A DNA stretch of 64,000 nt from Podarcis cretensis (lineage: Eukaryota), in NCBI GenBank assembly GCA_951804945.1, contig OX638154.1, positions 52,018,001 through 52,082,000 on the forward strand. Reading direction: 5' to 3'. Position 1 is the first letter of the stretch, and the number at the start of each line of letters is the position of its first letter. Position numbers and translations under genes: made by a program. A model generated the notes under the pieces. The model ran no database searches and was not told the origin of the DNA. It saw nothing but the letters and a program-made list of their open reading frames with translations. Shown one piece after another: positions 4,009 to 59,700 of this stretch.

Positions 4009-4789
4009 TTTATCATAGGATTCTTATACCCCAGCTATTCAAAGCCTGGTTCTTGCTTCTGAGTCCTAAAATTCAGTTCCTCATGCTATCAGCAAATCTA
4101 ACTCCTCGAGGATACAAAATCCTAGCCTCAATAGGAAAACTTTTCCCAACTTCTAGTTACACCTTTAACACTGGATGGTGTGGGTTAGCTCAAGGTTCAA
4201 CCAGAGTATAGAAACCTGCCCTCCTTCCTCAATCGCACTCTTATCTGCTTTTCCCATGTATGAGAATATGGCAGAGGTTGAGCCTGGGCATGTAGGGGCA
4301 CAATTGGCTTCCAAGAGTGCTCTAAGTTATAGCTAACTATAACTTCCACTTGCCAGTGGAAGCTGGATAAATGGGGATCTGTGGTATAATTTCACATGTG
4401 AATTAAGCTGCAGTGCTACACACCCCTGTTCCCCCAACAGAACCCCAAGTCTACTGTGCTGCCACTCTTAGCCCAGGGCTGCTTTATGTGCACAGATAAA
4501 CACCAGCACAATTGAGAGCACAGTGAGAAGAATAGGTTTACTTAGCTTCTTAACATAAAAAACACCATTTGGCAGAACTACTGTATTGTAGATGTCAGCC
4601 AGTTAAAATGTTGATCTATCCATCCACCAAGAGGAATGTCCAGGCCTGGGAAAGTGATATTCCTTGCCTTATACATGTGTCTAGTTATGGGTAGGAGGAA
4701 GAAGGTTGTGATAAAAACCATGTTTGGTTATCTCATCTAGATGCAGAAAGGGAAGGCAACTTTTTCTCATCATGGCCCAGTTGGTACTG

Positions 4790-7700
4790 TCATCCAGAAG
4801 GCTCATCTTCATATGCAATGGCAATTCCCCGTCGTCCAGCCACGGCTTTTGTGACTGCTGACTGCCCCAGCTGCTGCTCCAGCCCCCGCCAGCTTCGTGA
4901 CTCCAAAAATGAGGCTAAGACACACAAAAAGTCAATCAAACAAAAACAAAACAGAAGAACAATGATCATAGCATAAATGATTTCCCCAAGCTGAATTCCA
5001 GACACCACTCTGGAAGAGAACAGAGCTTACAGTATATTCAAGATTATGGATGAAAGAGCCCATGGGGCCCACTGCCCCACTCATTACTGCAACTGTAAAT
5101 GGAGGAAGGCGACTAGGCTGCTAATTGCTATTCTGACACTAGCATAAACCTTTGAAACATTCACCATATAACAGACTTCAAAACAGCCATTTTCATCTCC
5201 CAAGAACAACCATTAGTCACAAGAAAGGTCCTAACAGATGAGATTTGCCACCATTTGTGTGGACCGTTAACATAATCTGTTCCCGACCCCTCAGACACAT
5301 ACCTGCTGGGCTACTCTCAGCCATATGCATATGGCTGCGGCAGGTCACAGAGGTGCCAGAGCTTGGCTCTGGGTCCGGTGCTGTATAAAGACAAGTTGAG
5401 CGTAGCTCGCCAGTGATGAGTGAAATGCTGGGTTCACTGTCAGCCTCTGAAACCTTGTCTGGGAAATGGGTGTGTTCACATGCTCCTGCAGGCAACAGCA
5501 AGGGAAAGAGTAATAGCTAAGCTTGGCCCATCCAGAATCATGCCCTGCTTTTACCCACCTAAGGATGATCAAGAGGTGCAGAATTAGCACATGGAAAACA
5601 GCAGTAGGTGGGGTTGGCATTGCTCGCCTGGCTTCCCAACATGCTGCTTGTTACTGAGAGGTTGGGGAACTTGATAAGGGCATAGCTACTCTGATGCTTC
5701 CTTTCCTGCACCTATACCACACTGAGCTCCCCACTGCCTTGCCCTTTCCCCTCTTGGTCACTGGCAGCAATGCATGGCATGGGGAAGCCAGGTGAGCAAC
5801 ATCAGCCCCACTGGCCACTGCAAGGTGCAACTCTTCTTTGACCACCATTTCATATGGCAAATGTGGAGAGGACTATGGGAGGTACGCATAGCCCAATTAT
5901 ATCTGCTTGCACAATGGAACTTCCCCACTTCCTCCTTTCCCAAATCAGCTCTGAAGGGTTAGGGGAACCCCTAGAATAGATTCAGGGCAAGAGGAGGGGG
6001 GAGTTTCATTGTGCAAGTGAAAGTCTTTGCACTGACAGGACATGTTACTATTTTGGATACAACCCTATGTATTTGAATTATCCCCAATGTAGAAATTGTT
6101 CCCTGCCGCTGGTCTGTCTTTGTGTGGGTGTAGGGAACTTTATGGTCATTGCTGCTGCAGCAGACTATGCCTTCAGGGCAGGCCCAAGAGCATTGGTAGA
6201 GCTGTGCAGCTTTTATGAGTCTGAAATTGCAATTCATCGTGAGACTCAAGTTATCATTATAATAAAGCAACTTTCAAACCCTTATGCCTGCAGAGAGAAT
6301 TTTGGAAGTGTGTGACCAAACATAATTTCCAGAGTCTGGTGTGAAAGGAGCTCACTGGTTGTTGCCTCTACTCATTTCTCCAGTTACGAATCCTAGTATT
6401 ACCTGGTAGGAGGTGACGGAAATCTGTGACATAGCTGCCAGTCCAGGTCCGTGCTGGATTGCATGCCATCTCCAGCTCGTAGGGCGTGACCACAGGCCGG
6501 TAGAAGTCAGCTGAATCAAGCAAAGAGTTCTGTGGGCAGGCTACCAACACAAAAATGTCCACCTCTAGAAAGTTTGCCAGCTTTGCAGGGTTGGGTTTAC
6601 CCACAGCCAAGGTATAGGCCCGTTTGCCTGCCCGCTGAATGATGCCACGCAGATGCTCCAGAACAGACAAGTAGTCTGCCACACCAAGAGTGCCCACCAC
6701 AATGCCCACTACTTGGGCATCCCGTGCCCGCTCCACTAGATAGAGGCGTCGCCTCAGGGCCCGGTTCACATCCAATGTTTCCCGTCGGCCTTGTCCTGTC
6801 TGAGGATTAAAGGAGCTGAAGGGACACCGGTTCCAGCTCAGCATGAAGTTTGTGAGTTCTGGGCCTTCACAACCCACGTAGAACATGGCGTAGTTGTCAA
6901 GACCATGCTGACTGTCCACTACAAAGTGCCTCCCAAATTTCTTCACCAGCCCAGGAACTGGCTGAAGTTCCTTGTTATCCAGTTGAGAGAAAACTACATT
7001 GGGATAAATGGGGTTCAGCAGAGCGGCCAGGTTATCTGAGGGAAAGAGAAATGAGAAGTCGTTCAGTTTAGAGACAATAACTGTCACATACGCCTCACTG
7101 TTCCAAATACTCAGCAGGCCTTTTCCATGGACAGGGAAGGGCCCTTGTGCTAGACACTAGGTTTAAAGCTGTGATGGGGAACTCCTATCAGCCTCATGCA
7201 GCATAGCCAGTGGTCAGGGATGATGTGAGTTCTAGTCCAACAACATCTGGAGAGCAATAGGTTCCCCATCCCTGATTTAAAGGATGTAAACAGAGGGGAG
7301 TTAACTGAAAGCGAATATTACAAGGAAAGATTACTTCTGTGGTCCTTTAAAAGAGAACAACCCCTCCAGCCGCCAAATCAGAAATATAAATTGGAACATT
7401 CACAGGAGTATTGTCTTGAATTTTCTCACTCATAGAATCATAGAACTTATAAAAGCCTCTTTGGCAGGTATCTGTGCATTAACTGACCACATTCCTAGTT
7501 CATTCAAACTACAAAGGAGTAAACACTGATTAATTTATGTGGTTTTGCCTTTGAACATTAGCATGCAGGTCTATTAGCTTTGCTCTGAAGAATGTTATTG
7601 TTTGAGGAAACTGCAAACTAGTATCCTAGTGGCAAATGAGGTGGGGAGCACAGAGAGAAATAGGCATTTCCTGGTTAATCCAGCCCTGAGGATAGTAGAG

Positions 7701-9981
7701 AGGGTTAAAAGCTGGGACTGAGTAACATTGGAAGGCAGATAAGACATAAAGGGCAGGACTGGCAAGGAGAGCACTGTTTGAGGTTAGAGGATGCCCACTG
7801 TAGCTTTTTCTCATCCTGGCCTGATGTATCTCTTGAATACCACCCACCACCCACATTGTGATCCCCATGGTCTCACCAAGAGAATGAAAATAGGCCACTT
7901 CACTCAGCACAACCACATGAGCTAGAGGGTCTGGATGCAACTCCCGGAAGACTTCTGTGCAGCGCGCCACGTCTAGTTGTTTGTGGCCAAACACATGGAG
8001 CACGGGCAGCTTGCGGCAGGGACTCAAGCAGGCAGGGCCATAGTGCACCACAGCCTCAGCGCCCACGTGCTCTGCTGCCACTTCATCCACGCAACAGCTA
8101 AAGAAAAGCAACAGCATTAGCTATGGAGGGCAGCTTTCCTCAAAACACCTACCACCTCTATCACACAGAAAAATGCTTCCTTTGTAGTAAATGGGTTACC
8201 ATTGTAGAGACTGGATTTCCCCTGTCACCAGCTCACTCAGCATGCAAGGAGCCCCAGGCCTGACAGCAGATGGGAAAAATACTCTGTTACCAACACCCAA
8301 GATGCAGGAACTGGGGAGCAACTAATGATCCCAAAGTCCTACTCTCTTGTCATAAATAGTACCCCCACCCCAGCAGAGGCAGTCAAGAGACTGCTGAACA
8401 TCCAGAGGCTGACATATTACTACAGAACCCCTTGAAAATGCAAGCCTGCAGTATAGTCCTATGCATGTTCTCAGCACTAAGTTCCATGTTTTCAATGAGG
8501 CTTACTCCCAAGTGTCTATAGGATTACGGCCTCAGCTTCTATCATTTGTTTATGTGGAAGGAGGTTCCTGTTGTGACCTCACCTGCCGTATGATGTGTCC
8601 CCCAGAATGTACATTTTGGCACCAGTTGCTGCTTCCATCTTGCTAGCAAGGCTTGCTGAATCTGGCAAGAGTTCATCGGGAAACTGAAGAGCAACCTACA
8701 AAACAAACCCAATATAATTATTCAGCACATGTCCACTGTACACAGCTAGCAGTACTGTGGGTTTCCTGGGGAATTAGGCTTTGAAGAAAAAGGTCCCATC
8801 CACATGGACAGGATTTTTTCTTGTAAGTCTAATTGCCATGGGGAGAGGGGTTTGAAGGGTGAGGGTGGCAGCACTGGGGAGAGGGTTAATTTACCCCCCC
8901 CCCCAATCTGCATTGTGACTCCCTCAAAAACCTGCATACTGAGTGAAATGAATTTCCTCTAAGCTTAACTGCAGCAGGGAAGGGCAAAGAGCAAAAGCAA
9001 AAAAATGAGGAAGAATGGGTGGGGAGAGAGAATAGAATGGATGGACATACATGTGTAAGCAGTGATGTGGGTTTGCCAGTCAATTCTGAACTGGAACAAA
9101 ATCCTTCGAAAATTAGGTCCGTGTGAACAGGGCAATATGTGATGCCCTAGAACACTGGCTTTCAACAGGTGGACTTGGGCCCACTGGTGGGTCACGGCCT
9201 GATCCAAGATGGGTCACAACAGGAGCATAACCACCGTGCAAATATATGATAAAAGATTAAGAAATAGTTTTCCATATGTATGTTGGGGTTAAAAGTAGGT
9301 CCTGGGTCTGAAAAGGTTGAAGAATACCTGCCTTAGAGAAGGGTCTAATTTGGTATTTTTATTTTACTTGTATTTAGCAAACAAGAGCTAAAAACTTGAA
9401 ACTGCCAAGTTTGCCTAATGCTGTATTTGCAACTGGCATCCATTCATTGTTGATCATGACCTTATGAAACATATTTTTTCCTTGTGGAAAAATAAAGCAC
9501 CAGAAAGTCCACCACACATCACTGGTGAAAAGGAAAAGGTGGGGGGAGAAGAGATGTGCCTTGGGCGGCCTCAGCTCTCCCATCGCTGGCATGTTCCCCC
9601 TGGGAGATATGGCCCTTGGGGGAGGATTCCACATCTCTGCCTTAAATACTGTAGTGTGTGAGCTGCTTCTACATATTTATTTGTTTGGTAAACAAAACTT
9701 TTTAAAAGTCCCCCATATTTAGTGCCCCAATACTTGATTATTTGGGGCGGGGATGTCCACTAACTCTAGGGGAAGAACTGACATTCATGCCTGTAGCTTT
9801 CTGGCAAAAGGGCAAACTACTGTCTCACCTTAGTGAAGCCATTATCAGATACAAATGCAGCTGCTCTCTCCAGTTCATAGAACTCTTCCAGCCTGGTGGT
9901 TGGGGGACGTCCACTTGCTTCTGCAGGAATCACGGCACGCTGCATAACCTCAGCACCATCACTGCTGAATGCTGTTGCCAT
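4790..9981 (-). CDS. DPH2: Diphthamide biosynthesis protein 2; 6 coding exons, 475 aa
   Basis: Exons (minus): 9981-9829, 8695-8583, 8097-7877, 7035-6403, 5485-5303, 4914-4790. All introns GT-AG, phases consistent, total 1428 nt. Kozak gccaccATGg. Translation [12 protein letters not shown]...[10 protein letters not shown]...[19 protein letters not shown]...[23 protein letters not shown]...RSWRGLE...[15 protein letters not shown] carries hallmark Dph2 motifs. Confidence 0.96.
9153..9330. mobile_element. Degenerate hAT-type MITE in a DPH2 intron
   Basis: Ends cactggctttcaac / gttgaagaatacctg with near-identical 8-bp flanks CCCTAGAA / CCTTAGAG. Confidence 0.5.
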
Positions 9982-10323
9982 GGTGGCCTATATCCAAACT
10001 ACAAAAATACAAGGTGATGCTCGTCCGCATAGCAATATCCCACTACTAGCAAGATGCTGGATGAGAATGGTCCTGAGCGTCAGTTCTCCAAGGTCACATT
10101 TACAGGATCATATTCTATATTAATCAGTAGGGAACCGACATAGCTAAAACCCTTTGTATCCATGCTTCTAATCACTAACACTGATTAGAATGCCTCCTTC
10201 ATTCAGAAACATGCACTGAAATGGGTTTGGAGAGAGACAAGAAAATGGCACTGAAGCGGCTTGGGAAACAGAAGAACTCAGGAAGGCTCCTTACACAAAG
10301 ACAGACCACGGGTCTCTCTAGTT

Positions 10324-10459
10324 CAGGGATAGGCAAACTCGGCCCTCCAGAAGTTTTGTGACTACAATTCCCATCATCCCAGACCACTGGTCTTGTTAGC
10401 TAGGGATGATAGTAGTTGTAGTCCCAAAACATTTGGAGGGCCGAGTTTGCCTATGCCTG
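10324..10459. mobile_element. Palindromic hAT MITE, 136 bp
   Basis: TIRs CAGGGATAGGCAAACTCGGCCCTCCA / TGGAGGGCCGAGTTTGCCTATGCCTG. 8-bp TSD CTCTAGTT (10316-10323, 10460-10467). Confidence 0.9.
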
Positions 10460-10648
10460 CTCTAGTTCCATGTTGTCAAGGGGACTGACTGGCATTTCGG
10501 GCAGAAGCATTTCTCAACCTTACCTGGAACTGCCAGGAATTGAATCTGGAACCCCTTTGCACACAAAACAATTGTATCCCCCCGCCCGCCTGCCCGCCCG
10601 CCATAAGAAACATTAACTACTGTGCTCCATTACTGTCACTCTACTCAC

Positions 10649-10800
10649 CTAGAGGACCCCCCAACATCCACCACATGGCCACCAATACACTTCCTGGGTG
10701 GGGTTAAAGACACCCACGCTCCTTTCCCTATCGGAACGCGTCTTTTTTCTATCGTTTCGCTTCTCTTTCTCTCTCCCGCGTCATTAGCGGGAAGCTTTGC
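10649..10800 (-). other. DPH2: Probable non-coding first exon of DPH2 (5' boundary approximate)
   Basis: Strong donor CTAG|GTGAGT (minus, exon ends 10649) at the edge of the CpG island. Acceptor tttttgtag| lies 17 nt upstream of the DPH2 ATG (exon starts 9998). Confidence 0.6.
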
Positions 10801-11036
10801 AGCTTCCAACACAGCAAGGCCCTCGGAAAGTAGAATAAACGGGAAGCCTATCAGCGCGGTGCATTGTGGGGGGTGGAGTTTCGCCTTCCTCCCATCCGAC
10901 CAATCATCCCAGCCGGCGAGAGGCGTCAGATAAACTTCGTCTGATCACGTGGAGCGTGGTTCCCGTCATTCTGTGGGTCAGGTGATTCCCGGTCGCGTTC
11001 AGTCCGTGCTGAGGACTCGTCGCCGCCGCCGCCGCC

Positions 11037-42339: not shown

Positions 42340-45300
42340 ATGAGCAGATTGCTGGTGGGAGTGACCCTGGAGAGGATCTGCAAAGCTGTGCTGCTCTTAT
42401 GTTTACTGCACTTCCTCATCATCATGATCCTCTACTTTGATGTCTACGCCCAGCGCCTGGACTTTTTCAGCCGCTTCAATATGCGCAACTCCTCCCGCAC
42501 TCTGCCCTACGTCAACGTCTCTCGGCCTAACGGGACCGCCGGGCCTCTGGGCCCTGAGCTCCTGGCCCCGAGTGTGAAGTCCGTCAGTATGAACAGCACT
42601 GTCACCGAGAAGCCCTTACCACCTTGCCCAGAGATGCCTCCTGGCCTAGGTAGGATTACAGATGAGCTCTGTCTGCCTCATGCCGTGTCCTACAGAAGGC
42701 CCTTTAGTGGGGAAACTGTATTGCAGTTATTGGGTTTATTTGTGCCCTGCTTGCCACCTGCTGTTTCCCTGTCAATGCAAATATGTCAAGTGGCTTTGGC
42801 TCCTGATAATAGGAACTAGAAGATATAGGAATCTGCAGAACAGGCATGATATTGCAAATCATAGGCTCCAATAGCCTCTACCATTGGAGCCAATCCTGCA
42901 GTGGAAAAACAGTTGGGGATATGTGGACAGTATTTGTTGAAAGCTGGCAAACTGAATAGTGTTCTTAGTATATTTACAGTGATCAGATAGCGGATTTTTT
43001 ATTTCCTTTTTTGCCATGGCAACTCCTTGTCTCTTTCCCAGCCCCACTGTACCTAGCTGGTGCCTTTCTGCAAGTGGGCTACAAGTAATTGGGGAAAGGG
43101 CTCAGCTTCTGCACAGACACGGCTTAGTAGGGGCTACAAGGGTTAGCTCCTTCTTATGCTGATCTCTTTGAATGAATGCATGAAGTAGACCAGCTTTCAC
43201 TCACCTGATGCCCTCCAAATGTATTGGACTACAACATGGCTGCGGCTGATGAAACGTAGCACAGAAACCTCTGGAAAGCACCTGGTTAGTGAAGACCAAA
43301 GTAGACCATCTCCTCACCCTAGGGGGCAAAACATTTAAGGCATAGAGAACTTAATACCCTTATTCCTGACAGGTGAATAAAGAGTTGAAGCATAAGCTTT
43401 GGTACAGTGGTACCTCTGGATGTGAACGGGATCCATTCCGGAGCCCTGTTCGCATCCTGAAGTGAACGCAACCCGCGTCTACGCGTGTGCGGGTCGTGAT
43501 TCGCCACTTCCGCGCATGCGCGTGATGTCATTTTGACTGTCTGCGCATGTGCGAGTGGCAAAACCCGGGAATAATGGGCTCCGTTACTTCCGGGTCGCTG
43601 CAGCGCACAACCCGAAAATACTCATCCCGAAGCTACTTTAACTCAAGGTATGACTGTATTGATATTTAACTGGGGCTAAAACTTATTAAACAATGCAATC
43701 TGCAACAAGCAACAACCTTTCCTGTTAACTCTGAATCACTTATCTGGGTATTCAAGTTAACTCTGCTTTGACTGTTTGCTGTCTCTATGCTTGATACATG
43801 TTTCGGTATTTAGGTTTCTTTGCTGATTTTTTTCTGGGCAGTGCCCCACCAACTTGGCTGGTGAAAGGGACATGAGCTGTTTGTGTAAGTCAAGAGGCTG
43901 TGGCTGATGCATAGATAATGGAGTCCTTTCTCCTGCAGTGGGCCGGCTCCTTATCGAGTTCAGCACTCCCATGAGCATGGAGCGGGTGCAACGGGAAAAC
44001 CCAGATGTGCGGGAGGGCGGCAAGTATTCTCCTCCAGACTGTGTGCCTCGCCAGAAGGTGGCCATCCTCATTCCGTTCCGGCACCGGGAGCACCACCTCA
44101 AGTACTGGCTGCACTACCTGCACCCGATTCTACGGCGCCAGAAGGTGTCTTACGGCATCTATATAATTAACCAGGTGTGTAGAGAATGATAATGTGAAGC
44201 AGTGGTGCAGTTGGGTCATTGCGTATTCTGGACTGAATGGTCTCATGGGCATCCCCTTCAGATGGTAATGTGCATTACTTCAAAATATGGTGTTCCAGCC
44301 CTGCTGTGCTCCAAAGCAGAAGGAGTAGGGCCTGGATATCTGACCCAAAGTTCTGTCCTAATGGCACCACTGATGCGGAAGAGAGCAAGATGGTTGGGTT
44401 TAGAACATAGTGCCATCCGGTTCCCTTGAGAGGAGCCTGATTAGGGAAAGCGGTATGTTAGTTTTCATGAATATATGCCTCTCTGTTCTGAGTGGAAGCA
44501 AAGGCTTCCTGCTTTGTGGGGGAAGTTGAGTGTGGGCCTTACAATGCACCATGAACTTTGCACCTATGGTAAGTGTGGAATGTGACATAGATGCTTCTCA
44601 CTTGCTTCTTGTTTTTTAAAAAATCAGGCCTGCTCTCTGACATGACAATAAATCTGCAATACAGTTGGTGGGACTTTGCAAGATCTATAAAGGGAGATAT
44701 AACAGTTCTAGAAAAAAATAGGAAAACAGTAGAATGTTATTCACAATGAAATGTAACAAGAGAGAGGTCAGCCAGATGCATCAGGTAAGAGTAAAAGGGT
44801 TGTGGCAGTTGATGTGATCCTGTCCTTCATTATCTTTCCGTACAGTTTGGTGAAGACACCTTTAACCGAGCTAAGCTGTTGAATGTGGGCTTCCTAGAAG
44901 CCCTTCGAGATGATGAGAGCTATGACTGCTTCATCTTCAGCGATGTTGACCTGGTGCCCATGGATGACCGGAATCTCTATCGCTGTTATGACCAACCCCG
45001 GCACTTTGCTGTTGCCATGGATAAGTTTGGCTTCCGGTGAGTTTGTGCACTTTGATCTTTTTTGAAATGCCAGTGGCCCCTTGAAAATGTTCAGAGTGTC
45101 AGAGGCAAAATTGAAGGAGGAATATATGACTTTATTGCACACATAACTTATGTGCTCTCATTCTGTGTGGCTTGGACATTGTGGGGACCTGCAAGCTGTG
45201 AATTGTGTTTCTTATCTAGATTGCAGTACAGGAACCTCCCCCATTCTTAAGACTACCATGTCACATTTCTTCATAATTTGCAGGGGTTTTGTACTGAAAA

Positions 45301-50008: not shown

Positions 50009-50261
50009 GTTTCAAAACTTGGGAGACTCCTTGCCTATGGGATTCAGGTGGGGTCTGTGGATAGAGGCAACACTGCAGGTTTATGCAATCTATCTTGGCA
50101 AGGTACAAAATTAAGAATTAAATTCGTTTCCAAATGAATGGCACCTCATTGTGCTTCCCCAACATGTTTGTTTAAAGCAGGGACTGGGTTTTCTGGCCCA
50201 GGAAACTCTGGGCGTAGTTACTCAGCCCAGAAGACAAGAGAGAACTATTCTACAAGGTTCT

Positions 50262-50267
50262 TTTATT
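50262..50267 (-). terminator. Polyadenylation signal of the VWC2-like gene
   Basis: TTTATT on plus (AATAAA on minus), ~470 nt after the stop at 50736. Confidence 0.6.
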
Positions 50268-50735
50268 GATGCTCACACACAGAGAAAAACTGTTAAATAG
50301 TAGCAAAAGATGCTATGTTTAGTTGAAGCTGGAGTGGGAATGTGGTGGTGGTTGGTGGGTGATTCCCTAAATCATATGGGGAACCTCTAGCTCTCAAGAT
50401 GTGGCTAAATTATTCCTAACCATTAGCCATGCTGGCTACAGCTGATGGGAGCTGGGAGTCCAACTATATCTGAATGGCCACAGGTTGCCCACCCATCCTA
50501 AATAAAACGGGCTTTCTCATATGAGCTACTCCCCTGTGTAATAGCTCCAGACATTGTCAAGGGAAAGGGGGTAGATCTGGAAAGGGGTCTACGACTGGCA
50601 ATTGCTTATGTGTATGGTTGAAGGAGTTGGGCCAGGGCTGGGTGTAAGGGCACACTAGGGCTTGTCTGGGTAAGCAGAAGCCTTGCAGGTGCTGAAGAAT
50701 GGCTGGCCCAGGAATTGTTTCGTGTTTGGAGCAGC

Positions 50736-53700
50736 TCAGGTGTGATGTGCACCTGTAGCCCGGCATCCCCGTAGCCGCTCGCATTTAGCTAAGCGGTTTC
50801 CTTCCCAGTAACCAGCGTCCTGGCCATCATGACAGCGGCAACGGGTGCAGGGCCCCACCCATATGCTCTCCCCAGCAGGAATTATGCGTCGCTGGCTCCC
50901 ATCCACGTAGCAGTTGGGCCCTGTGGAGAGACATGTCCATGTATTAGAGTCTGCCATTGTTTGCAGAAGTCTCATCATGACTTTTAGAAGCAGAAATGGC
51001 AAGCAGTTTAAGAGTACATGTGTGGGTGGGGGCAACCCAGCTAGATGGGCGGGGTATAAATAATAAAATTATAAATTATTATTTCTCCAGCCTTGCACCC
51101 CTATCCTCTACCGGAAGCTCACCTAGTGCCTGTTCGTCCACAGGTTCTGTGCTACAGGCTGCTTTTGTACAGGAGGACATTTTTCATTTTTGGGGGAGCC
51201 CCTCTTCTAACACTAGGGGCAAACACCTGCCAAATCCTTCAAGATGAGGTGGGGGCTACCAGGTGTCCCACCATCATTTCTAAGTAGGAGGCTTCCTGTT
51301 CAGTTAAGCAACCTTGTGTCTGGTCAGCTTGGCCCAATTCCTCTCACTTCCCTGCTCCAGTAGACAGGGGCCCTGAACAGCGAGGGAGACAAAGTTCTCT
51401 CCCCCTTCTGGACAGCTTGAAGTGGAACACTTGTCCCTTGCTGTGAAGGTGTTTCTTTCTCACCGTCCTCACAGGTGGGGCAGCAGTGGCCCTTCTCGTA
51501 GACTGGATTGACACAGGGCGGAGGGGCGCAGTCTGCCACTAGGCAACGAGCGATGCCATCTAAGTCACAGGTACACTGCTCACACTCTGAGGGCTGTGAG
51601 AGACAAATGTTGGTCAATAGAGCAAGGCAGCTTTACGTGGACAGCACACGGTTATGATGATGATGATGCAGCTCCAGAACTATTTTGCATCAGTGGTGCA
51701 GAAGCTTCTTATTTTCTGAGAATTGCATTCCCTTGGGAATCTGTTCAGAATTGCATGCCAGTGGTGTGCTGGTCCAGAGTCAAAGTGGGTAGGGCACCTC
51801 CTCTGCTACTCTGTTTCCCTCCCCCTTTTCCTCCTAATGAAATTAGGCTGAGAGAAATAGGTTACCCATCCACCCCACACCACCAGGTTGCAGAATTGAC
51901 TGGATTTTGCAGTTCCAGAATGAATTAGTCATGTCTTCTGTCTGTAACTTGCAAAAAGAGGTGTGTGTATGCAAGCAGGTGGGAAACTCATGCCTCAGAT
52001 ACTTAATTGGATTAGGCTCCTGGCTGCATCTTTGCTTACCTGTATCTGTGCTTTAAGTTTCAGGGAAGGGGGTGATCACAAAAGAAATATAAGGCCCATC
52101 ATCTTCCTTTTTTTGTAATGTGTGAAGAAGCATTCCAAACTGAATGCATAGCCATGGCAGTACTGGGATTATACCATCAGATGGCACTATCAACCAAGAA
52201 TTGATAGATAATGAGGGAGGAAAAGCTTCTGTCGCAATCTCCCTTGATTTTGTGTATCTTGTCAGCTCTGGCCAACTCAAGATTACTCTCAAATAATCAT
52301 GCGGCTGGCCACTGGGGAAACTGACTGGTCATAAGAAAATGTTGAATAGAGAAAACTGTGAGTGAGTGAGAGATTGTCCCCAGTAGCACAGAACCATCAA
52401 GGATCCCAATATGCTAAAAAGGGCCATGAATGTGTTTTGGAACCCATTAACCAATCAAGCTCCTCCTTAAAATATCCAGTAAAGGATACTGAAGTCATTT
52501 TCAGCACCTCACCTCTCATTCGCCTTCTCACTTGCAAAACATGAGGTAATTCTAGCCAAGCCACATGCTTTTGTTCTCTGCCCTAAGGGGAAAGTTCCAA
52601 GATTCTACCTTCTGTCAAATTCCCTCCCTCCTGAATTAATAGATTGGTTGTCTGATTTCACACCTTCAGGGTGGGTGATGATAAAGACTGGGCTCCACTG
52701 AAGTTCAAGTGGTTGCAAATAAAAACATTGGTCACTTGTTCTAGATCACTCGTCACAATACTTTAAAATAACAAAGCTGGAAGATGGCATCAACATTTAA
52801 CACCAAAAATCATATCTTAATGATGTAATTGTCCATGATCATCTTTATAACACCAGGGAAGGAGATTGCACAACTTCACTGGCAAGTTGATATCTTGTTC
52901 TTACTACAAACCTACAGTACAAAGGAAAGTGTTTACCCTTCCTAATTACAGAACTTTTCTCTCTCTAGATCTACAGCACTTGTCTTGCTTGTAAGCAAAT
53001 GCAAGATAACCTAGTTCCAGGAGGTGCTGGGAAGCAGCCCTAAATTACTGTAGCCACAACCCAGATGTTCTGGACCTAGAGCAAAATGGCCATCCCTAGT
53101 AAAGAACTGAGAAGCTTTGGCTGAGCAAAGTATTTTAGGGCAAGTTAGGCCCCAGCTAAATGGTTCTGGATAATCAAAAGCTTGCTTGCTATTATATGAT
53201 ATTTTGGTTGGCCATAATAAAGTTATTATTTGGGGGGAAATTATGGCTCAATATGGCTTTGCAGAAAGCATTTACTTTCTGTGTACCTTTCAATAGAATT
53301 TTGTGTTTGGGTAAATGGGACAGGCCAAGAGATAAGTCATCAAACAGACACACAATAATTTGGTGTTTAGCTAACAGACAATTCACCTAGGAAGAACCCC
53401 ACTGCCCATTCTTTGACTATATGTAGCAACTGGTCCTTTCTTCATCAATACACTTATTTTTTGCAAACACTCAATTCATGCTATCCAAAGAGGCATGGAG
53501 CCCAGGAATGGAGGGCTTTGATCTTCCACCTGCAGCCTCAGGGCCAGAATTTGACTCCCTTCGGCTAGTGCAGGCGTAGTGCCAAAAATACTCCTTTCCG
53601 AACCCACCCTCAATTGTCCAAGTCAGCCATGCTAGAGATTGTTTGGTCTGACTCAAGTCCTAAAATAAACTACACACATTTTTGGCAGCAACAGACAATA

Positions 53701-54557
53701 GCCAGAAGCAAGGTCTGAACAGGTCAATGTCAGGCCTAAGAAATGGATGAAAATGAAATTCAATTAGTCAAAGGATGCTCAGCTAGGTACTACAGCCAAT
53801 AAAATTGCCTTCTGAATTATTGGTTTTATGGGAACATCTTAAGAGCACCTCCAGCTTCATAGAGCACTTTTGATTTGGTGCTTCTCGCCCACTTTGGAAA
53901 AAATGCAATTTATTAGTTTTGTTTGTATTTTCTTTTGCTTCAGCCAGTAATGAACAAACTATAAAAACACAGCGTTCCTGCTTCCAGTCTCTTACTCTCC
54001 TGCCTAGGCCTCCCTTTCAGAACAAGATTTAAGAAACAGAAGGGACTGCTTGAGATTCTTTTTCAGGAGCGTTCGCTTTTTCTCCTGCTTTTGAATATCC
54101 TCACTTTGCCCATCCATCACCTATTCATCCCTGCCCACCTCGCTCTAGATTCCTTCTCATGCCACCCCTTTGCCTAATTCTCCCTTGAATGCCTTACCTG
54201 GAAATGCTGCCCCAGCTCATACACTTGTCCACGGTGCTCACAGCCAACCCTTTCGCAGCGTGGGCAGCAGTCGCTGGGGTAGTGGCTGACGTGAATGCAG
54301 GCAGGTGGCAGAGCGGTGCAGTCCGTGCGGGCGCAGGCGGGCCCCTCCGCTGTGCACTCGCACTGGGTGCAGTGGTCACTGTCCAGGAAATACCACTCCC
54401 CAACATAGTACAGGCTCCCGTTGGCATCGCACGTGGTCACTGGCCCTGCCAGTCCTGGGATGGGCACCAGAGTCAGCAGCAGCAGCAGCAGCAGCGCTAA
54501 GCTCAGCTGTGCCAACGGAAAGGGCATCGCTGAACTCGAGGGACAGATGCCGGGCAT
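50736..54557 (-). CDS. Secreted brorin/VWC2-family protein (von Willebrand factor C domains), divergent paralog; 3 coding exons, 224 aa (214 aa from the second ATG at 54527)
   Basis: Exons (minus): 54557-54198, 51593-51464, 50920-50736. GT-AG, phases 0 and 1, total 675 nt, no stops. Leu-rich signal peptide, then Cys-rich modules CDANGSLYYVGEWYF..CTQCECTAEGPAC..CCPRC, CEHRGQVYELGQHFQPSECEQCTC..CLVADC..CVNPVYEKGHCCPTC, GPNCY..IIPAG..CTRCRCHDG. Confidence 0.9.
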
Positions 54558-54602
54558 GGGAGTTGGCGAGAGGGAGGAGCAGAGCAGCAGCAGCAGCAGC
54601 AG
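54474..54602 (-). repeat. Two CTG tracts: (CTG)7 in the signal-peptide poly-Leu and (CTG)6 upstream of the ATG
   Basis: (CAG)7 at 54474-54494 and (CAG)6 at 54585-54602 on the plus strand. Confidence 0.9.
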
Positions 54603-55500
54603 TAGGGAAGCGAAGCGGAGGAGAGCTGGCGGGGAAAGAGGGCATCCAGCCCGCTCCAATGCCGCCCGCGAGGTCCCGCCGGGAGGTTGCCTGCTGAAGC
54701 TGCGTCTAAGAACCGCCCTGGCGTGCCTCGGCCTTTGTGCAGCCGCCGCCCGGCCCGGTCCGCCCCTTCTTGCAACCCGAGCCCGCCCAGGGGCACAGCA
54801 CCCCCTCCCCAACGGAGCGGGCGGGACCGGGGCGGTGGGAGGGACCTGGCCCCCTATCTGCACCTCAGGAAAAGCCTGCTAAGAAAAGTCCGCTGTGCTC
54901 CCTCTCCAAACCCCTCGAACACTCATCCGGGCAGCGAATGCTGCGTCTCCCCAGTTCCCAGTCTCCGCGGCCTCCAAAACACGCGCGGCGCTGGATCTCT
55001 CCCCCCCCCCTTTATTCCTAGGAACATTAATGGGCAAAGAAAGAAGTTTCTCAATACTGTACTGTTACCAAAGCGTAAAGCCAGTGGGACCCCTTCCGGA
55101 TAAAAACTGGCCGACGTGTGGCTGCTCTTTACCTCCGACTGCTTGGGTGCAAGCGCGGGCGCACCAAGAGCTTCAACGCACACGCTTCCTTCCCCCGGGA
55201 CCCCCGTCTCCACGCTCAACCGACATCCTGTCTGCCTCGTGGGCACGGCTCCTTTAAGAGGCGAGGCTTAACAGGAACGCGGCGGGGCGTTTCCATGGAG
55301 ACGGCGGGTTTATATTCCAGAGAGTTAGAGGGTGGAGGGGGCTCGGATAGGGCAAGACGCCTGGCCCTCTGCCCCTCCGCCCGGTGTCGCAGGTGAGGGC
55401 TACCGCAGAGTTATGTCCGTGAGTCCGTAGGGAGTGAGGAAGTGTGGGGAGAGTAAAAGGTCTGGGGCGGAAGTGGGCTCGGTGGGCCGAGACGTAGGTG
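54600..55500. promoter_or_regulatory. CpG-island bidirectional promoter (VWC2-like gene / CCDC24) with an RFX X-box
   Basis: CpG-rich. X-box-like GTTTCCATGGAGAC 55289-55302, GC boxes, ETS CGGAAGT ~55468. Donor CAG|GTGAGG at 55392/55393 (CCDC24 non-coding exon) and acceptor at 56746/56747. Confidence 0.75.
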
Positions 55501-56623: not shown

Positions 56624-56778
56624 TGTAAAACCATTAAGTTCAGTGTCTAAAATTACCTAGGTGCACCACTGCATGTTGCACCAAGTAGTTGTGATGTGGA
56701 GCTTCTACTCACTGTCTCATTGGCACAATCTTTTTTTCCTTTAAAGCCTCATTTATCGTGGAATCGGATACAGCACCC

Positions 56779-59700
56779 ATGTTGCCCTTGCCTGGTGCAT
56801 CTGGGGAATCCTTGCAGTCCGTACCATCACTCTGGACAATGGTAGAGGAACAATTAGCACCCAGTGAGAGGCTTGAGGCGAAAGCTATCTTGGGTCATGG
56901 CCTTGTGGAACGGAGCTTGGAACTTCATGCTGAGGTTAAGTACCAAAATACTGGATCTCCTATTCAAAATGATTCACAAAAGAGCAGAACAAACAAACCA
57001 CCTCTCTTACTACACAATTTAGAAGTGGCTGGTGACAAAGGGATATCTGAATAAAGCATCAAATCTAGGTCTTATCAGCTAAAGAGGCAGCACTAATTTT
57101 GTAAGGGGATTTGACTGATGAAAGGGCCCGCCTTTCATGTCTATAGATTGAGTGGCGTGGACAGTGCTAAAATTGAGTGGAGCTAAGGGAGGGCTTGGGC
57201 GGGACGCGGGTGGCGCTGTGGGTAAAAGCCTCAGCGCCTAGGGCTTGCCGATCGAAAGGTCGGCGGTTCGAATCCCCGCGGCGGGGTGCGCTCCCACTGC
57301 TCGGTCCCAGGGCCTGCCAACCTAGCAGTTCGAAAGCACCCCCGGGTGCAAGTAGATAAATAGGGACCACTTACTGGTGGGAAGGTAAACGGCGTTTCCG
57401 TGTGCTGCGCTGGCTCGCCAGATGCAGCTTTGTCACGCTGGCCACGTGACCCGGAAGTGTCTCCGGACAGCGCTGGCCCCCGGCCTCTTGAGTGAGATGG
57501 GCGCACAACCCCAGAGTCTGTCAAGACTGGCCCGTACGGGCAGGGGTACCTTTACCTTTAAGGGAGGGCTTATAAATTGTATTAAGCCCCCTTCCACTGG
57601 GCAATGGCCACTAGTTTTGGCATACATGCATTTTCATATAGAGTAGCATTCATGTGTATGATAATCTTGTATGGAGAAAACCTCTGGTTTGCCACTTACA
57701 TCTGCTTTGAGTGCTGTTTAATTTAAGTGAAAGGAAAGCATATCTGAGAAGGCAAGTCAAGGAGGGGATAAAATATTGCAACCACCCCCTCCCTATTTGA
57801 CAAGGTCCCCATTTGCCAGCTCCCAGCTCAGCTGGTTCCTAATGCTTGGCCAGAGCCCCTAATCCATGCTATTCCAGGCCCTTTGTTCTCCTCCAGCCAT
57901 TCATGCCCTTTCTTTATTCAGCATGGTCCTGACTGCAGCTGAGAAGAACAGTAAACATCCCAGAGGCTTTTCACATGGTAATTGCCTTACCTCCTCCTGA
58001 AACCAGAAGAGCAAGCACAGCACACCCTGACAAGATGGCACCTTTTTCACTCTATCACTTCTTCATGTTAGAGCTTTGCTTGAGATCCAGCCCCCCCCAT
58101 TGTGATTAGTGACCCCTCCCCAGCCTTTATGGGGTCTCTCACCTGGCTGTCTATTACTTCTTCATCACAAGCCTGATAAATGTAGCCCAGGTACTGCCTG
58201 TCTCCCTGCTGTGTTCTTGTATGTGTCCCCGCTCCCCTCCCCAATTGGATATCTGAGAGGCCGCCCAGGGAAGCAGCTGTACCATAAAGTTCCTCTTGTG
58301 GATGTGTGGGGCCAGAAAGGGAGTTCTGGCGCTCGCCTGCCTTACAAATATCCTGCAGATATTTTTGCGGCATGACCTTGACTTTCCTCATGGGGGGAGG
58401 GAGAGAATGATTGTGGGTGGGCTGTCTGCAGCTTTGCACCTTTTATGGAGTGTACAGACAGCAACAAAGTAGTGCCCTCTTGCCAGCTACATTGGAATGA
58501 CAGTGTCCTGGCTGGTGTTCTTATCTTCTGCAGGCAACTTTGCCCACTTTCTGCAAAAGAGTTGTTTTTTTAAAACCTAAAAACTTCACTCTTAATCCTA
58601 AAATACACTTCACATAAACTAATAGCCTCATAGTCTGTTCCCAGTCTTTGGGGAGATGCAACATTTTACTGAATTTTAGTGTGCTCTCTCACACACTTAT
58701 CACATTTGAGGCATCTTTTATTCCCTTGATGCATGACATACTTCCAGAAAGTTGTCAGTTCCCTGACTGTGGCCTTTATGAAATGTAATTGTCTACCATC
58801 AGGTGAGTAATTAACCCATGGCTAGGTATTGGTTTTCTTTTCTTGCAGGCAGGCACCTGGCTTGATTTCCAGGTGTGCAGAATAGCAATACTGGAATGGG
58901 AGTGCAACTTGTATTTTTAGGTTGTGTCAGTGCTTCATCATTTGGGGAGGTGGAGGGTGGGGGAAAGATTACTTTGAGAAAGTTACTGCAGTTTGTGTCA
59001 ATGTGCACATGTGTGAATTTCTGCGTGTGGCAATGCACTGTCCCTAATGCAGTCCAACCCCTTCCCTATTTACAGGTGCGGACACTGTTGGAATTACATC
59101 AGGAGTTGCAGTCAGGCCGCCTTGGAGTGGAGCAAAGCCCACTGCAGGCGGATGACAGCTGGGCCTTGCTGGCAGCTCCCCCCCACCTCAAGGAGCTGGT
59201 GAGGGAGGAGATCCGCCTTCTTCTAATTGGCCTACAGCAGAAGGCATCGCAGGAGGGCAGGTACTGGAGATTGGAAGAGAAGGGACTTGAGAGAATTAAG
59301 GGCTGAGTTGAGGGGGAGCAGGTAGTAGGGATAGAAGAAAAGCAAGCAGAATATCTTAGGACCTGAAGCATATTTGATATAAAAATGAGCCCATTAGTTT
59401 CCAACTGATGTGGCTGGTGGTATTTATGTGTGCAGAATGGGTGAGTTTTATATCATCTTTGGGCCAAAGCAGTCTAGATTGAGGAAGCCATAACTATTTG
59501 TTATGAGAGGCTTAGAGTTTCATGGGACAAATCAGTTAGGAGGCTAGACAATAACCTGATTGTCTCTCTTAACAAGAACAGGATGAGGGAAACCTCTGAT
59601 TCCACTCAGATATAAATAAGTCCAGTGCCACCTAGTGACTAAACTATATATTTACACTATTGACACAGTATTCTTTCTCCCTTTGCCTTCTAAGGGTGAC

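What the first reader, a model, noticed from the sequence alone, without database searches (positions are those of the whole stretch)
50736..54557. Intact third brorin/VWC2-family gene between B4GALT2 and CCDC24
Seen: a clean 3-exon ORF (360+130+185 nt) with a signal peptide, tandem VWC-type Cys modules, its own CpG island and a poly(A) signal. Known: VWC2 (brorin) and VWC2L are secreted neural BMP antagonists and AMPA-receptor complex constituents, located near IKZF1 and IKZF2. In human, B4GALT2 and CCDC24 are immediate neighbours. Seen against recalled VWC2L: Cys spacing and motifs such as VADC..CVNPVYE..CCP.C..GPNC..IIPAG agree, but the conserved DDYRGKGC pre-domain block is missing and the C-terminus (DAGYWEGNRLAKCERLRGC) is distinct. 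Inference: a separate, probably unnamed and uncharacterised paralog kept in reptiles and lost from this locus in placental mammals; a candidate extra BMP modulator.
Basis: partly seen in the sequence, partly recalled or inferred. Interest (0 to 1): 0.82.

Follow-up and report, generated by a model that had tools for sequence, protein, structure and literature searches.

The report
Unstudied fourth brorin-family gene in lizard
This lizard window holds an intact, spliced and strongly conserved gene for a small secreted cysteine-rich protein: an ancient, unstudied relative of the BMP-blocking brain proteins brorin (VWC2) and brorin-like (VWC2L) that fish, amphibians, turtles and lizards keep and that was not found in mammals or birds.

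Summary
A three-exon gene lies on the minus strand (54557-54198, 51593-51464, 50920-50736) with canonical splice sites. It has a CpG-island promoter and an AATAAA signal at 50267-50262. Contigs from four runs of two related lizards carry exactly both predicted exon joints, and exon depth far exceeds intron depth.

Each exon matches one VWC2L-specific Pfam domain above threshold. The protein is 96-100% identical to RefSeq models in Podarcis, Lacerta and Zootoca, all auto-named "VWC2-like". It is the orthologue of zebrafish zgc:113531 (LOC541359).

Orthologues were found in sharks, rays, ray-finned fish, lungfish, amphibians, turtles, tuatara and squamates. None was found in mammals, birds, crocodilians or cyclostomes.

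In a 56-protein tree this clade lies outside a 100/99-supported group holding VWC2, VWC2L, a further fish/shark lineage (si:dkey-283b1.7) and all cyclostome copies. AU tests reject joining it to VWC2L (p 0.0005) or VWC2 (p 0.003). So it is a separate ancient paralogue, one of four in jawed vertebrates, and not a moved copy.

No paper mentions it. Its function, probably extracellular binding of BMP-type ligands, is inferred and untested. It is a new, uncharacterised member of a known family, of moderate interest.

The parts
54198..54557 (-). Coding exon 1 (120 codons): leader, signal peptide, the first VWC domain and the start of the second
   Evidence: Translation. Pfam VWC2L_1st (PF23333) 1.9e-14 and VWC 2e-4. 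97.5% identical to Podarcis lilfordi P0370 residues 1-117.
54447..54527 (-). Conserved alternative start (ATG 54527-54525) and the signal-peptide core MPFPLAQLSLALLLLLLLTLVPIPGLAG
   Evidence: Hydropathy peak 2.9 and G at -3 of this ATG. Varanus and snake models start at this position.
54255..54431 (-). First VWC (chordin-type CR) domain with 10 Cys; the conserved N-glycosylation sequon NGS is at residue 46
   Evidence: Pfam VWC covers residues 43-101. The PDB profile hit to Crossveinless-2 VWC1 (3bk3, 2mbk) has E 1e-4. 'ANGS' is invariant or nearly so in the clade.
51594..54197 (-). Intron 1 (2604 nt, GT..AG)
   Evidence: The joint 51593->54198 (skips 2604, ends CT..AC on the + strand) is present in 4 of 4 runs. 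Intron depth is about 7-24 against an exon depth of up to about 1500.
51464..51593 (-). Coding exon 2 (130 nt): the rest of the second VWC domain
   Evidence: Translation. Pfam VWC2L_2nd (PF23334) 4.7e-10. 100% identical to the five lacertid orthologues compared.
50921..51463 (-). Intron 2 (543 nt, GT..AG); it contains a short piece of a very abundant repeat at 51027-51075
   Evidence: The joint reported as 50921->51466 with an 'A' between equals the 50920|51464 junction plus a synonymous GAC>GAT change. It is present in 4 of 4 runs.
50736..50920 (-). Coding exon 3 (185 nt including the TGA stop): C-terminal 6-Cys half-VWC domain with the clade-specific GYWEGNRLAKCERLRGC tail
   Evidence: Translation. 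Pfam VWC2L_C (PF23331) 2.3e-17. 98.3% identical to the Podarcis and Lacerta orthologues.
50246..50735 (-). 3' UTR (about 490 nt) with the poly(A) signal AATAAA at 50267-50262
   Evidence: Sequence. RNA-type contigs extend 154-160 nt beyond 50400 and stop there (table 8).
54200..55500 (.). CpG island over exon 1, the 5' UTR and the promoter, facing the divergently oriented CCDC24
   Evidence: GC 0.55-0.71 and CpG o/e 0.6-0.8 against a window mean of 0.26. Transcript contigs cover 54558-54900 and run further on.
42340..44189 (+). Flank: B4GALT2-type coding exons (convergent, tail to tail with the gene)
   Evidence: An ORF starts MSRLLVGVTLERICKAVLLLCLLHF. Window 43938-44189 matches Glyco_transf_7N at 4.3e-31. 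The name B4GALT2, as opposed to another B4GALT, rests on recalled sequence.
56758..59306 (+). Flank: CCDC24 exons (divergent, head to head with the gene)
   Evidence: Window 58875-59306 matches Pfam CCDC24 (PF15669) at 5.2e-11. The probable first coding exon is 56758-57054.

Best explanation
This is the lacertid orthologue of zebrafish zgc:113531 (LOC541359). It is an intact, transcribed and correctly spliced three-exon gene. It encodes a secreted protein of about 190 residues in its mature form, built of two complete 10-Cys VWC (chordin-type CR) domains and a 6-Cys C-terminal half-VWC.

It belongs to the brorin (VWC2/VWC2L) family by domain content and by shared intron positions. It forms its own ancient lineage, sister to all other vertebrate brorins, and it keeps the architecture of the single Ciona gene.

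Shown here: gene structure, transcription and splicing in close relatives, family membership, separate clade status, wide retention, and strong sequence constraint.

Inferred: after signal-peptide cleavage and N-glycosylation, the protein acts in the extracellular space by binding BMP-type ligands through its VWC domains. This would mirror how brorin, brorin-like and Crossveinless-2 VWC1 work, and would modulate (most likely antagonise) Smad1/5 signalling. I put about 0.95 on the identity part and about 0.5 on the BMP mechanism.
For: Gene model.

Splicing and expression: both junctions are present in 4 of 4 runs from 4 studies of 2 related organisms. Exon depth is up to 60 times intron depth. 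Contigs end about 20 nt after AATAAA.

Family: PF23333, PF23334 and PF23331 each score above their gathering thresholds.

Orthologues: 64 and 116 hits from sharks to squamates, 60-98% identical. The lacertid RefSeq models have the same exon joints.

Separate lineage: tree and AU tests.

Ancestral-type characters shared with Ciona P0132 and not with VWC2L: the C-x2-C-x-C spacing in VWC1, the short C-x3-G-C linker, and the YW(A/E)G...C...C tail.

Shared intron positions are inferred from where mispredicted or alternative VWC2/VWC2L models diverge. P0202 and P0219 diverge before VSPCE. P0164, P0166, P0180 and P0191 diverge after CCPxCxxG. Miyake 2017 states that brorin has two introns (PMC5407822).

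Constraint: about 5 differences in about 581 coding nt (0.9%) against 91 in 2661 intron nt (3.4%) and 11 in 336 3'UTR nt, between the window and organism A. Two of the three coding changes I could place are synonymous.

Fold: the AF2 model has pLDDT above 90 for residues 40-190. It matches the tandem VWC of NEL/NELL2, collagen IIA VWC, CCN3 VWC and the CV2 VWC1-BMP2 complex 3bk3_C at TMt 0.67. The PDB profile hit to CV2 VWC1 has E 1e-4.

BMP antagonism by brorin, and CV2 VWC1 binding BMP2 through subdomain 1: PMC5407822 and the PMC2944808 abstract.
Against: No binding or signalling data exist for any member of this clade; the literature searches were blank.

Identity to VWC2 and VWC2L is only 35-41%. 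The branch between the clades is very long, at more than 2 changes per site.

The mature N-terminus has only about 4 residues before the first Cys. It lacks the DYRGKGC pre-domain, so a CV2-like N-terminal 'clip' is unlikely. A conserved glycan sits right after the first Cys. Both could change ligand specificity.

Tandem VWC domains also bind non-BMP partners. The best structural hit is NEL/NELL2, and VWC2L binds CD36 (PMC9578707).

The runs are only guessed to be RNA, and their tissue is unknown.
Confidence: 0.85

Rival explanations
1. The gene is real and secreted, but the protein is not a BMP antagonist. Its tandem VWC domains would bind another partner, for example a cell-surface receptor as for NELL2-ROS1/Robo3, the scavenger receptor CD36 as for VWC2L, or the AMPA-receptor extracellular complex in which brorins were reported.
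For: The best structural match is the NEL/NELL2 tandem VWC (9oz8, E 1e-6; 10ft is NELL2-ROS1). VWC2L binds CD36 in a cell-surface screen (PMC9578707). The clade lacks the brorin pre-domain and has its own invariant tail and glycan site. The very long branch to the brorins leaves room for a change of function.
Against: The nearest solved sequence relative is the BMP-2-binding VWC1 of Crossveinless-2. Both characterised family members antagonise BMPs (PMC5407822). No partner has been identified for this clade.
Confidence: 0.3
2. It is simply the species' VWC2L or VWC2 orthologue, moved next to B4GALT2 and diverged.
For: Automatic annotation names it 'VWC2-like'. It has the same three Pfam domains.
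Against: AU tests reject a clade with VWC2L (p 0.0005) and with VWC2 (p 0.003). The clade contains sharks, fish, amphibians and reptiles, each of which also has true VWC2L or VWC2. Examples are Chrysemys P0298/P0075, Leptobrachium P0278/P0010, Fundulus P0365/P0018 and Anolis P0310/P0386.
Confidence: 0.02
3. It is a decaying or untranscribed relic, or a gene-prediction artefact.
For: No run is on record as RNA. No literature was found.
Against: The frame is open across three exons with canonical splice sites. Spliced contigs have exon depth far above intron depth in 4 runs. All 26 Cys are kept, and identity to fish and sharks is 64-75%.
Confidence: 0.01

Closest known systems
Zebrafish zgc:113531 / LOC541359 (NP_001013504.2, 'uncharacterized protein precursor') and the RefSeq 'VWC2-like' models of Podarcis, Lacerta, Zootoca, Anolis, turtles, amphibians and sharks
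   Same: These are orthologues. They share the same three domains and the same exon joints. Identity is 96-100% to the lacertid models and about 68% to zebrafish.
   Different: Nothing structural differs. The window's copy has a longer Leu run in the signal peptide. None of these genes has a published function.
VWC2L (brorin-like)
   Same: It is a secreted protein of similar size (about 220 aa). The domain order is the same: VWC2L_1st, VWC2L_2nd, VWC2L_C. The gene has three coding exons with introns at homologous positions. Motifs VADCA, CVNPVYE, CCPxC, GPNC and IIPAG are shared.
   Different: Identity is only 40%. This gene has no DDYRGKGC pre-domain. It has one extra residue in the VWC1 C-x2-C-x-C motif, a linker two residues shorter, and a different tail. 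It sits in a different clade (AU p 0.0005) and at a different locus.
VWC2 (brorin)
   Same: The core of two CR domains plus the C-terminal domain is the same. Brorin is a BMP antagonist in vitro and in zebrafish (PMC5407822).
   Different: Brorin has an N-terminal extension of about 130 residues and the DYRGKGC block. A clade of the two is rejected (AU p 0.003). Brorin's nearest relative is the fish/shark si:dkey-283b1.7 lineage, not this gene.
Crossveinless-2/BMPER VWC1 (PDB 3bk3, 2mbk)
   Same: It is the closest solved sequence relative of the first VWC domain (E 1e-4). The fold matches at TMt 0.67.
   Different: CV2 has five VWC domains plus a VWD domain. It binds BMP-2 with an N-terminal clip that has no counterpart here. 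The two are not orthologous.
Ciona intestinalis 'VWC2-like' (XP_026691205.1, P0132)
   Same: It sits on the same side of the 100/99 branch as this clade. It shares the VWC1 spacing, the short linker and the YWxG..C..C tail.
   Different: Identity is 37%. Ciona has a long N-terminal extension and a long branch, and its placement with the unnamed P0133 is flagged as a possible long-branch join.

Membership tests
VWC2/VWC2L (brorin) family as defined by Pfam | VWC2L_1st (PF23333), VWC2L_2nd (PF23334) and VWC2L_C (PF23331), present in that order | tested here: met
   The three exons score 53.7, 40.0 and 63.1 bits, each against a cut-off of 27.
VWC2/VWC2L (brorin) family | Secreted: an N-terminal signal peptide and no transmembrane segment | tested here: inconclusive
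   A hydrophobic leader is followed by LAG|P, and this is conserved across orthologues. No signal-peptide predictor was available, and secretion was not assayed.
VWC2/VWC2L (brorin) family | Three coding exons with introns inside the second CR domain and before GPNC | tested here: met
   The window's junctions are Q|PSECE and a split Gly codon before PNC. Homologous break points are inferred from divergent VWC2/VWC2L models. Brorin has two introns (PMC5407822).
Orthologue of VWC2 or of VWC2L | Falls inside that clade in a tree | tested here: not met
   It forms a separate clade with 94/96 support. AU tests give p 0.0005 for VWC2L and 0.003 for VWC2.
Orthologue of VWC2 or of VWC2L | The conserved (D)DYRGKGC block immediately before the first CR domain | tested here: not met
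   The block is absent from all 16 aligned clade members. It is present in VWC2, VWC2L and the si:dkey-283b1.7 type.
Chordin-type CR/VWC repeat proteins | A 10-Cys repeat with C-x2-C-x-C and CC-x2-C motifs, and the VWC fold | tested here: met
   There are two 10-Cys repeats. Pfam VWC scores 2e-4 and 1e-4, just under the gathering threshold. The AF2 model matches collagen IIA, CCN3 and CV2 VWC structures.
Extracellular BMP antagonists | Direct BMP binding and inhibition of Smad1/5 signalling | not testable with these tools
   This is inference from brorin and CV2 only.
zgc:113531 orthologous group | Clade-specific invariant motifs (ANGS, GEWYFLDSD, HVSHYP, GYWEGNR) and high identity over the full length | tested here: met
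   All these motifs are present in the window's exons and in alignment A1. Best hits are 96-100% identical.
zgc:113531 orthologous group | Conserved position between B4GALT2 and CCDC24 in other species | not tested
Only this window's flanks were checked.

The most novel reading that the evidence does not exclude
The clade may be the surviving ancestral-type chordate gene, the direct counterpart of the single Ciona gene, with brorin, brorin-like and the si:dkey-283b1.7 type as a derived vertebrate offshoot. It may have a ligand or receptor specificity of its own rather than being a redundant BMP antagonist. Its apparently independent disappearance from mammals and from archosaurs would then mark the loss of a distinct extracellular signalling component in those lineages.
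Probability: 0.15. Interest if true: 0.65.

Novelty: new member of a known kind. Interest (0 to 1): 0.42.

Why it matters
The brorin family is described in the literature as two genes (PMC5407822). The data here show four ancient lineages in jawed vertebrates, of which mammals keep only two.

This lineage is very conserved: about 64-75% identity from shark to lizard, with all 26 Cys kept. Contig depth suggests substantial expression in at least one lizard sample. It has a ready zebrafish orthologue (zgc:113531) but no published function.

It is therefore an easily testable candidate extracellular BMP modulator in fish, amphibian and reptile models. It is also a caveat for knock-down and knock-out studies of vwc2 and vwc2l in zebrafish, where two more paralogues could compensate. 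It is not a new kind of system.

Tried and rejected
- Exons were searched one by one by reference. Annotated full-length orthologues (P0370, P0004 and others) served as proxies in alignments, the tree and the fold. The window's own row is therefore not in the tree.
- For the first word search I used the reference window:54198-54863:- with region 140-222, so that full-length relatives fell inside the length filter.
So there is no synteny in other genomes, no orthologous DNA and no formal dN/dS. Only a crude comparison of coding against intron divergence was possible.
- The word-index profile search with the clade alignment did not retrieve vertebrate VWC2 or VWC2L. These were obtained through the exhaustive representative search and a second profile.
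- Literature searches for zgc:113531, LOC541359, dkey-283b1.7 and possible names such as vwc2l2 found nothing relevant.
- The search of earlier findings by words (VWC2, brorin, IKZF1/2) was blank, so I could not locate this genome's canonical copies.
- The human locus was not inspected, by rule. That B4GALT2 and CCDC24 are adjacent in human rests on recall.
- Rejected readings: a translocated VWC2L or VWC2 (AU tests), and a pseudogene or prediction artefact (splicing and conservation).
Full report
**What is in the sequence.** The minus strand of 50736-54557 carries three open exons with canonical splice sites. Exon 1 is 54557-54198 (donor CAG|gtaagg). Exon 2 is 51593-51464 (acceptor ctcacag|, donor ACG|gtgaga). 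Exon 3 is 50920-50736 (acceptor tccacag|, stop TGA at 50738-50736).

Exon 1 encodes a hydrophobic leader (Kyte-Doolittle peak 2.9), then a 10-Cys VWC repeat and the first Cys of a second repeat. Exon 2 completes the second 10-Cys repeat. Exon 3 encodes a 6-Cys half-repeat. The mature part therefore has 26 Cys, plus one N-x-S sequon directly after the first Cys.

A CpG island runs from about 54200 to 55500 (CpG o/e 0.6-0.8 against 0.26 for the window). AATAAA lies at 50267-50262. B4GALT-type exons lie upstream on the + strand and CCDC24 lies downstream on the + strand. The gene is thus tail to tail with the former and head to head with the latter.

There is one refinement. A second in-frame ATG at 54527 has a better context (G at -3). 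It is the start used by Varanus and snake models. The first ATG is shared only with lacertid models.

**Transcription and splicing.** No run is on record as RNA, but twelve small runs hold about 0.27-0.32 of the stretch's words. That share is roughly what the exons and UTRs make up.

I laid four runs from four studies on the stretch. Three are from organism A and one from organism B; both are close relatives whose intron sequence differs from the window by about 3.4% in substitutions. Exon depth is far above intron depth: in X5 about 1500 against 24, and in X13 about 520-820 against 18. All four runs carry a joint 51593->54198, which is exactly the predicted exon 2/exon 1 junction. All four also carry a joint reported as 50921->51466 with one letter 'A' between. 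That is the predicted 50920|51464 junction combined with a synonymous GAC>GAT change at 51465.

The contigs run 154-160 nt beyond 50400 and stop there, about 20 nt past the AATAAA. At the 5' end they continue beyond 54900, so the transcription start is not fixed.

Coding divergence from organism A is about 5 in 581 nt. Intron divergence is 91 in 2661 nt and 3' UTR divergence is 11 in 336 nt. Of the three coding changes I could place, two are synonymous and one is Ile>Val.

**What family it is.** Each exon on its own passes the Pfam gathering threshold for one VWC2L-specific domain: VWC2L_1st 1.9e-14, VWC2L_2nd 4.7e-10 and VWC2L_C 2.3e-17.

Exons were searched by reference, and annotated orthologues served as full-length proxies.

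The word search and a profile search found 64 and 116 relatives, 60-98% identical. Cluster look-ups show the gene in geckos, lacertids, skinks, anguids, iguanians, agamids, Varanus, snakes, an amphisbaenian, tuatara, many turtles, frogs, salamanders, caecilians, lungfish, gar, sturgeon, many teleosts, sharks and rays.

[quoted passage not shown] Zebrafish RefSeq calls it 'uncharacterized protein LOC541359 precursor'.

The window's exons are 97.5%, 100% and 98.3% identical to Podarcis lilfordi, with exon joints at the same residues as in the Podarcis, Lacerta and Zootoca models. The window therefore comes from a lacertid.

No mammal, bird, crocodilian or cyclostome appears among these hits. A profile of VWC2/VWC2L searched in the same database returns many birds and mammals. 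Given how conserved this clade is, its absence from annotated mammalian and avian proteomes is meaningful. It is still non-detection, not proof of loss. The turtle copy is compositionally skewed, so a hidden GC-rich avian copy cannot be excluded.

**Is it a separate paralogue?** The exhaustive representative search and the second profile search supplied VWC2, VWC2L and other relatives.

I built a 56-row IQ-TREE tree (LG+C20, 220 columns). The 16 orthologues of the window's gene form one clade with 94/96 support. Everything else from vertebrates falls in one group with 100/99 support on a branch of 2.06 changes per site. That group contains VWC2L (100/97), VWC2 (100/95), a further lineage sister to VWC2 (100/97), and three lamprey-hagfish pairs. 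The further lineage is called si:dkey-283b1.7 in teleosts and is present in teleosts, gar, lungfish and rays.

AU tests reject a clade of the window's lineage with VWC2L (p 0.0005) or with VWC2 (p 0.003).

Species with this gene also have the canonical copies. Examples are Anolis carolinensis, Varanus, Chrysemys, Leptobrachium, Fundulus, Lepisosteus, Protopterus and Mobula. A translocated orthologue is therefore excluded. For a lizard this is the third family member. For jawed vertebrates as a whole it is one of four.

Ciona's single gene, and an unnamed Logan protein, sit on this clade's side of the long branch. That join involves long branches and carries a warning.

Pairwise alignments add three characters that Ciona shares with this clade and not with VWC2L: the C-x2-C-x-C spacing in the first repeat, the short C-x3-G-C linker, and the YWxG...C...C tail. 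This suggests, but does not prove, that the window's lineage keeps the ancestral form and the brorins are the derived one.

Intron positions appear shared across all lineages. I infer this from where aberrant or alternative VWC2/VWC2L models diverge, and from the statement that brorin has two introns (PMC5407822).

**How it probably works.** The profile's nearest solved sequence relative is the first VWC domain of Crossveinless-2, solved in complex with BMP-2 (3bk3, E 1e-4).

An AlphaFold2 model of the Podarcis orthologue has pLDDT above 90 for residues 40-190. Foldseek matches it to the tandem VWC of NEL/NELL2 (E 1e-6), collagen IIA VWC, CCN3 VWC and CV2 VWC1 (TMt 0.67).

Brorin inhibits BMP2/6-induced Smad phosphorylation, and its overexpression inactivates Bmp signalling in zebrafish (PMC5407822). 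CV2 binds BMP2 through subdomain 1 of VWC1 (PMC2944808 abstract).

The most likely mechanism is therefore a secreted, glycosylated tandem-VWC protein that binds BMP-type ligands outside the cell and modulates their access to receptors. I rate this at about 0.5.

Several points weigh against a simple equivalence:
- identity to the brorins is only 35-41%;
- the DYRGKGC pre-domain is missing;
- only about four residues precede the first Cys;
- a conserved glycan sits at that spot;
- VWC tandems can bind other partners (NELL2-ROS1; VWC2L-CD36 in PMC9578707).

**Novelty and verdict.** Searches of the open literature for zgc:113531, LOC541359 and si:dkey-283b1.7 found nothing. The brorin papers speak of two family members only.

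The gene is, however, already modelled in over fifty genomes under similarity-based names. This is therefore a real, correctly read, uncharacterised member of a known family: a sound finding of moderate interest, not a new kind of system.

Noticed in passing
related proteins P0285, P0294, P0287, P0288, P0297, P0280, P0252, P0167 (not in the window): A further unnamed brorin-family lineage exists. It is called si:dkey-283b1.7 in teleosts and carries a DYRGKWC or DYRGKGC motif. It forms a 100/97 clade sister to VWC2 in teleosts, gar, lungfish and rays, and I saw no tetrapod member in my sample. No paper mentions it.
   Followed up: partly
window 51027-51075 (intron 2 of the gene): A roughly 45-nt piece (…ccccgcccatctagctgggttgcc… next to a TTA/ATT-rich run) draws contig depth of 4500-11000 in all four runs, with many different loose ends. 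It is a fragment of a very abundant, transcribed interspersed repeat.
   Followed up: no
window 54464-54502 and 54575-54600: There are (CTG)n runs, one encoding the poly-Leu core of the signal peptide and another in the 5' UTR. Their length differs between relatives: 3- and 6-nt indels at 54582-54583, and 7 Leu here against 4-5 in Podarcis. Organism B also lacks 14 nt just upstream of the first ATG (54558).
   Followed up: partly
window 54881-54900 and beyond: Contigs that contain exon 1 continue well past 54900 (X5 record of 1425 nt, X13 record of 2572 nt), and one diverges at 54881. This could be a longer 5' UTR, an upstream exon, or a contig merged with the divergent CCDC24 transcript.
   Followed up: no
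turtle orthologue P0062 (Emys) and its cluster: The turtle copies are much more divergent in the first VWC domain (67% against 80-98% in other taxa). They are compositionally skewed towards Ala, Arg, Pro and Gly and have lost the NGS sequon. This could reflect GC-biased evolution or relaxed constraint in the lineage nearest to the archosaurs, where the gene was not found.
   Followed up: no
representative-search hits P0117-P0131 (not in the window): The top scores of the exhaustive search are giant proteins of 900-4200 aa with 8-31 matching stretches of VWC2L-type repeats. Their taxa are unknown and they were not examined.
   Followed up: no
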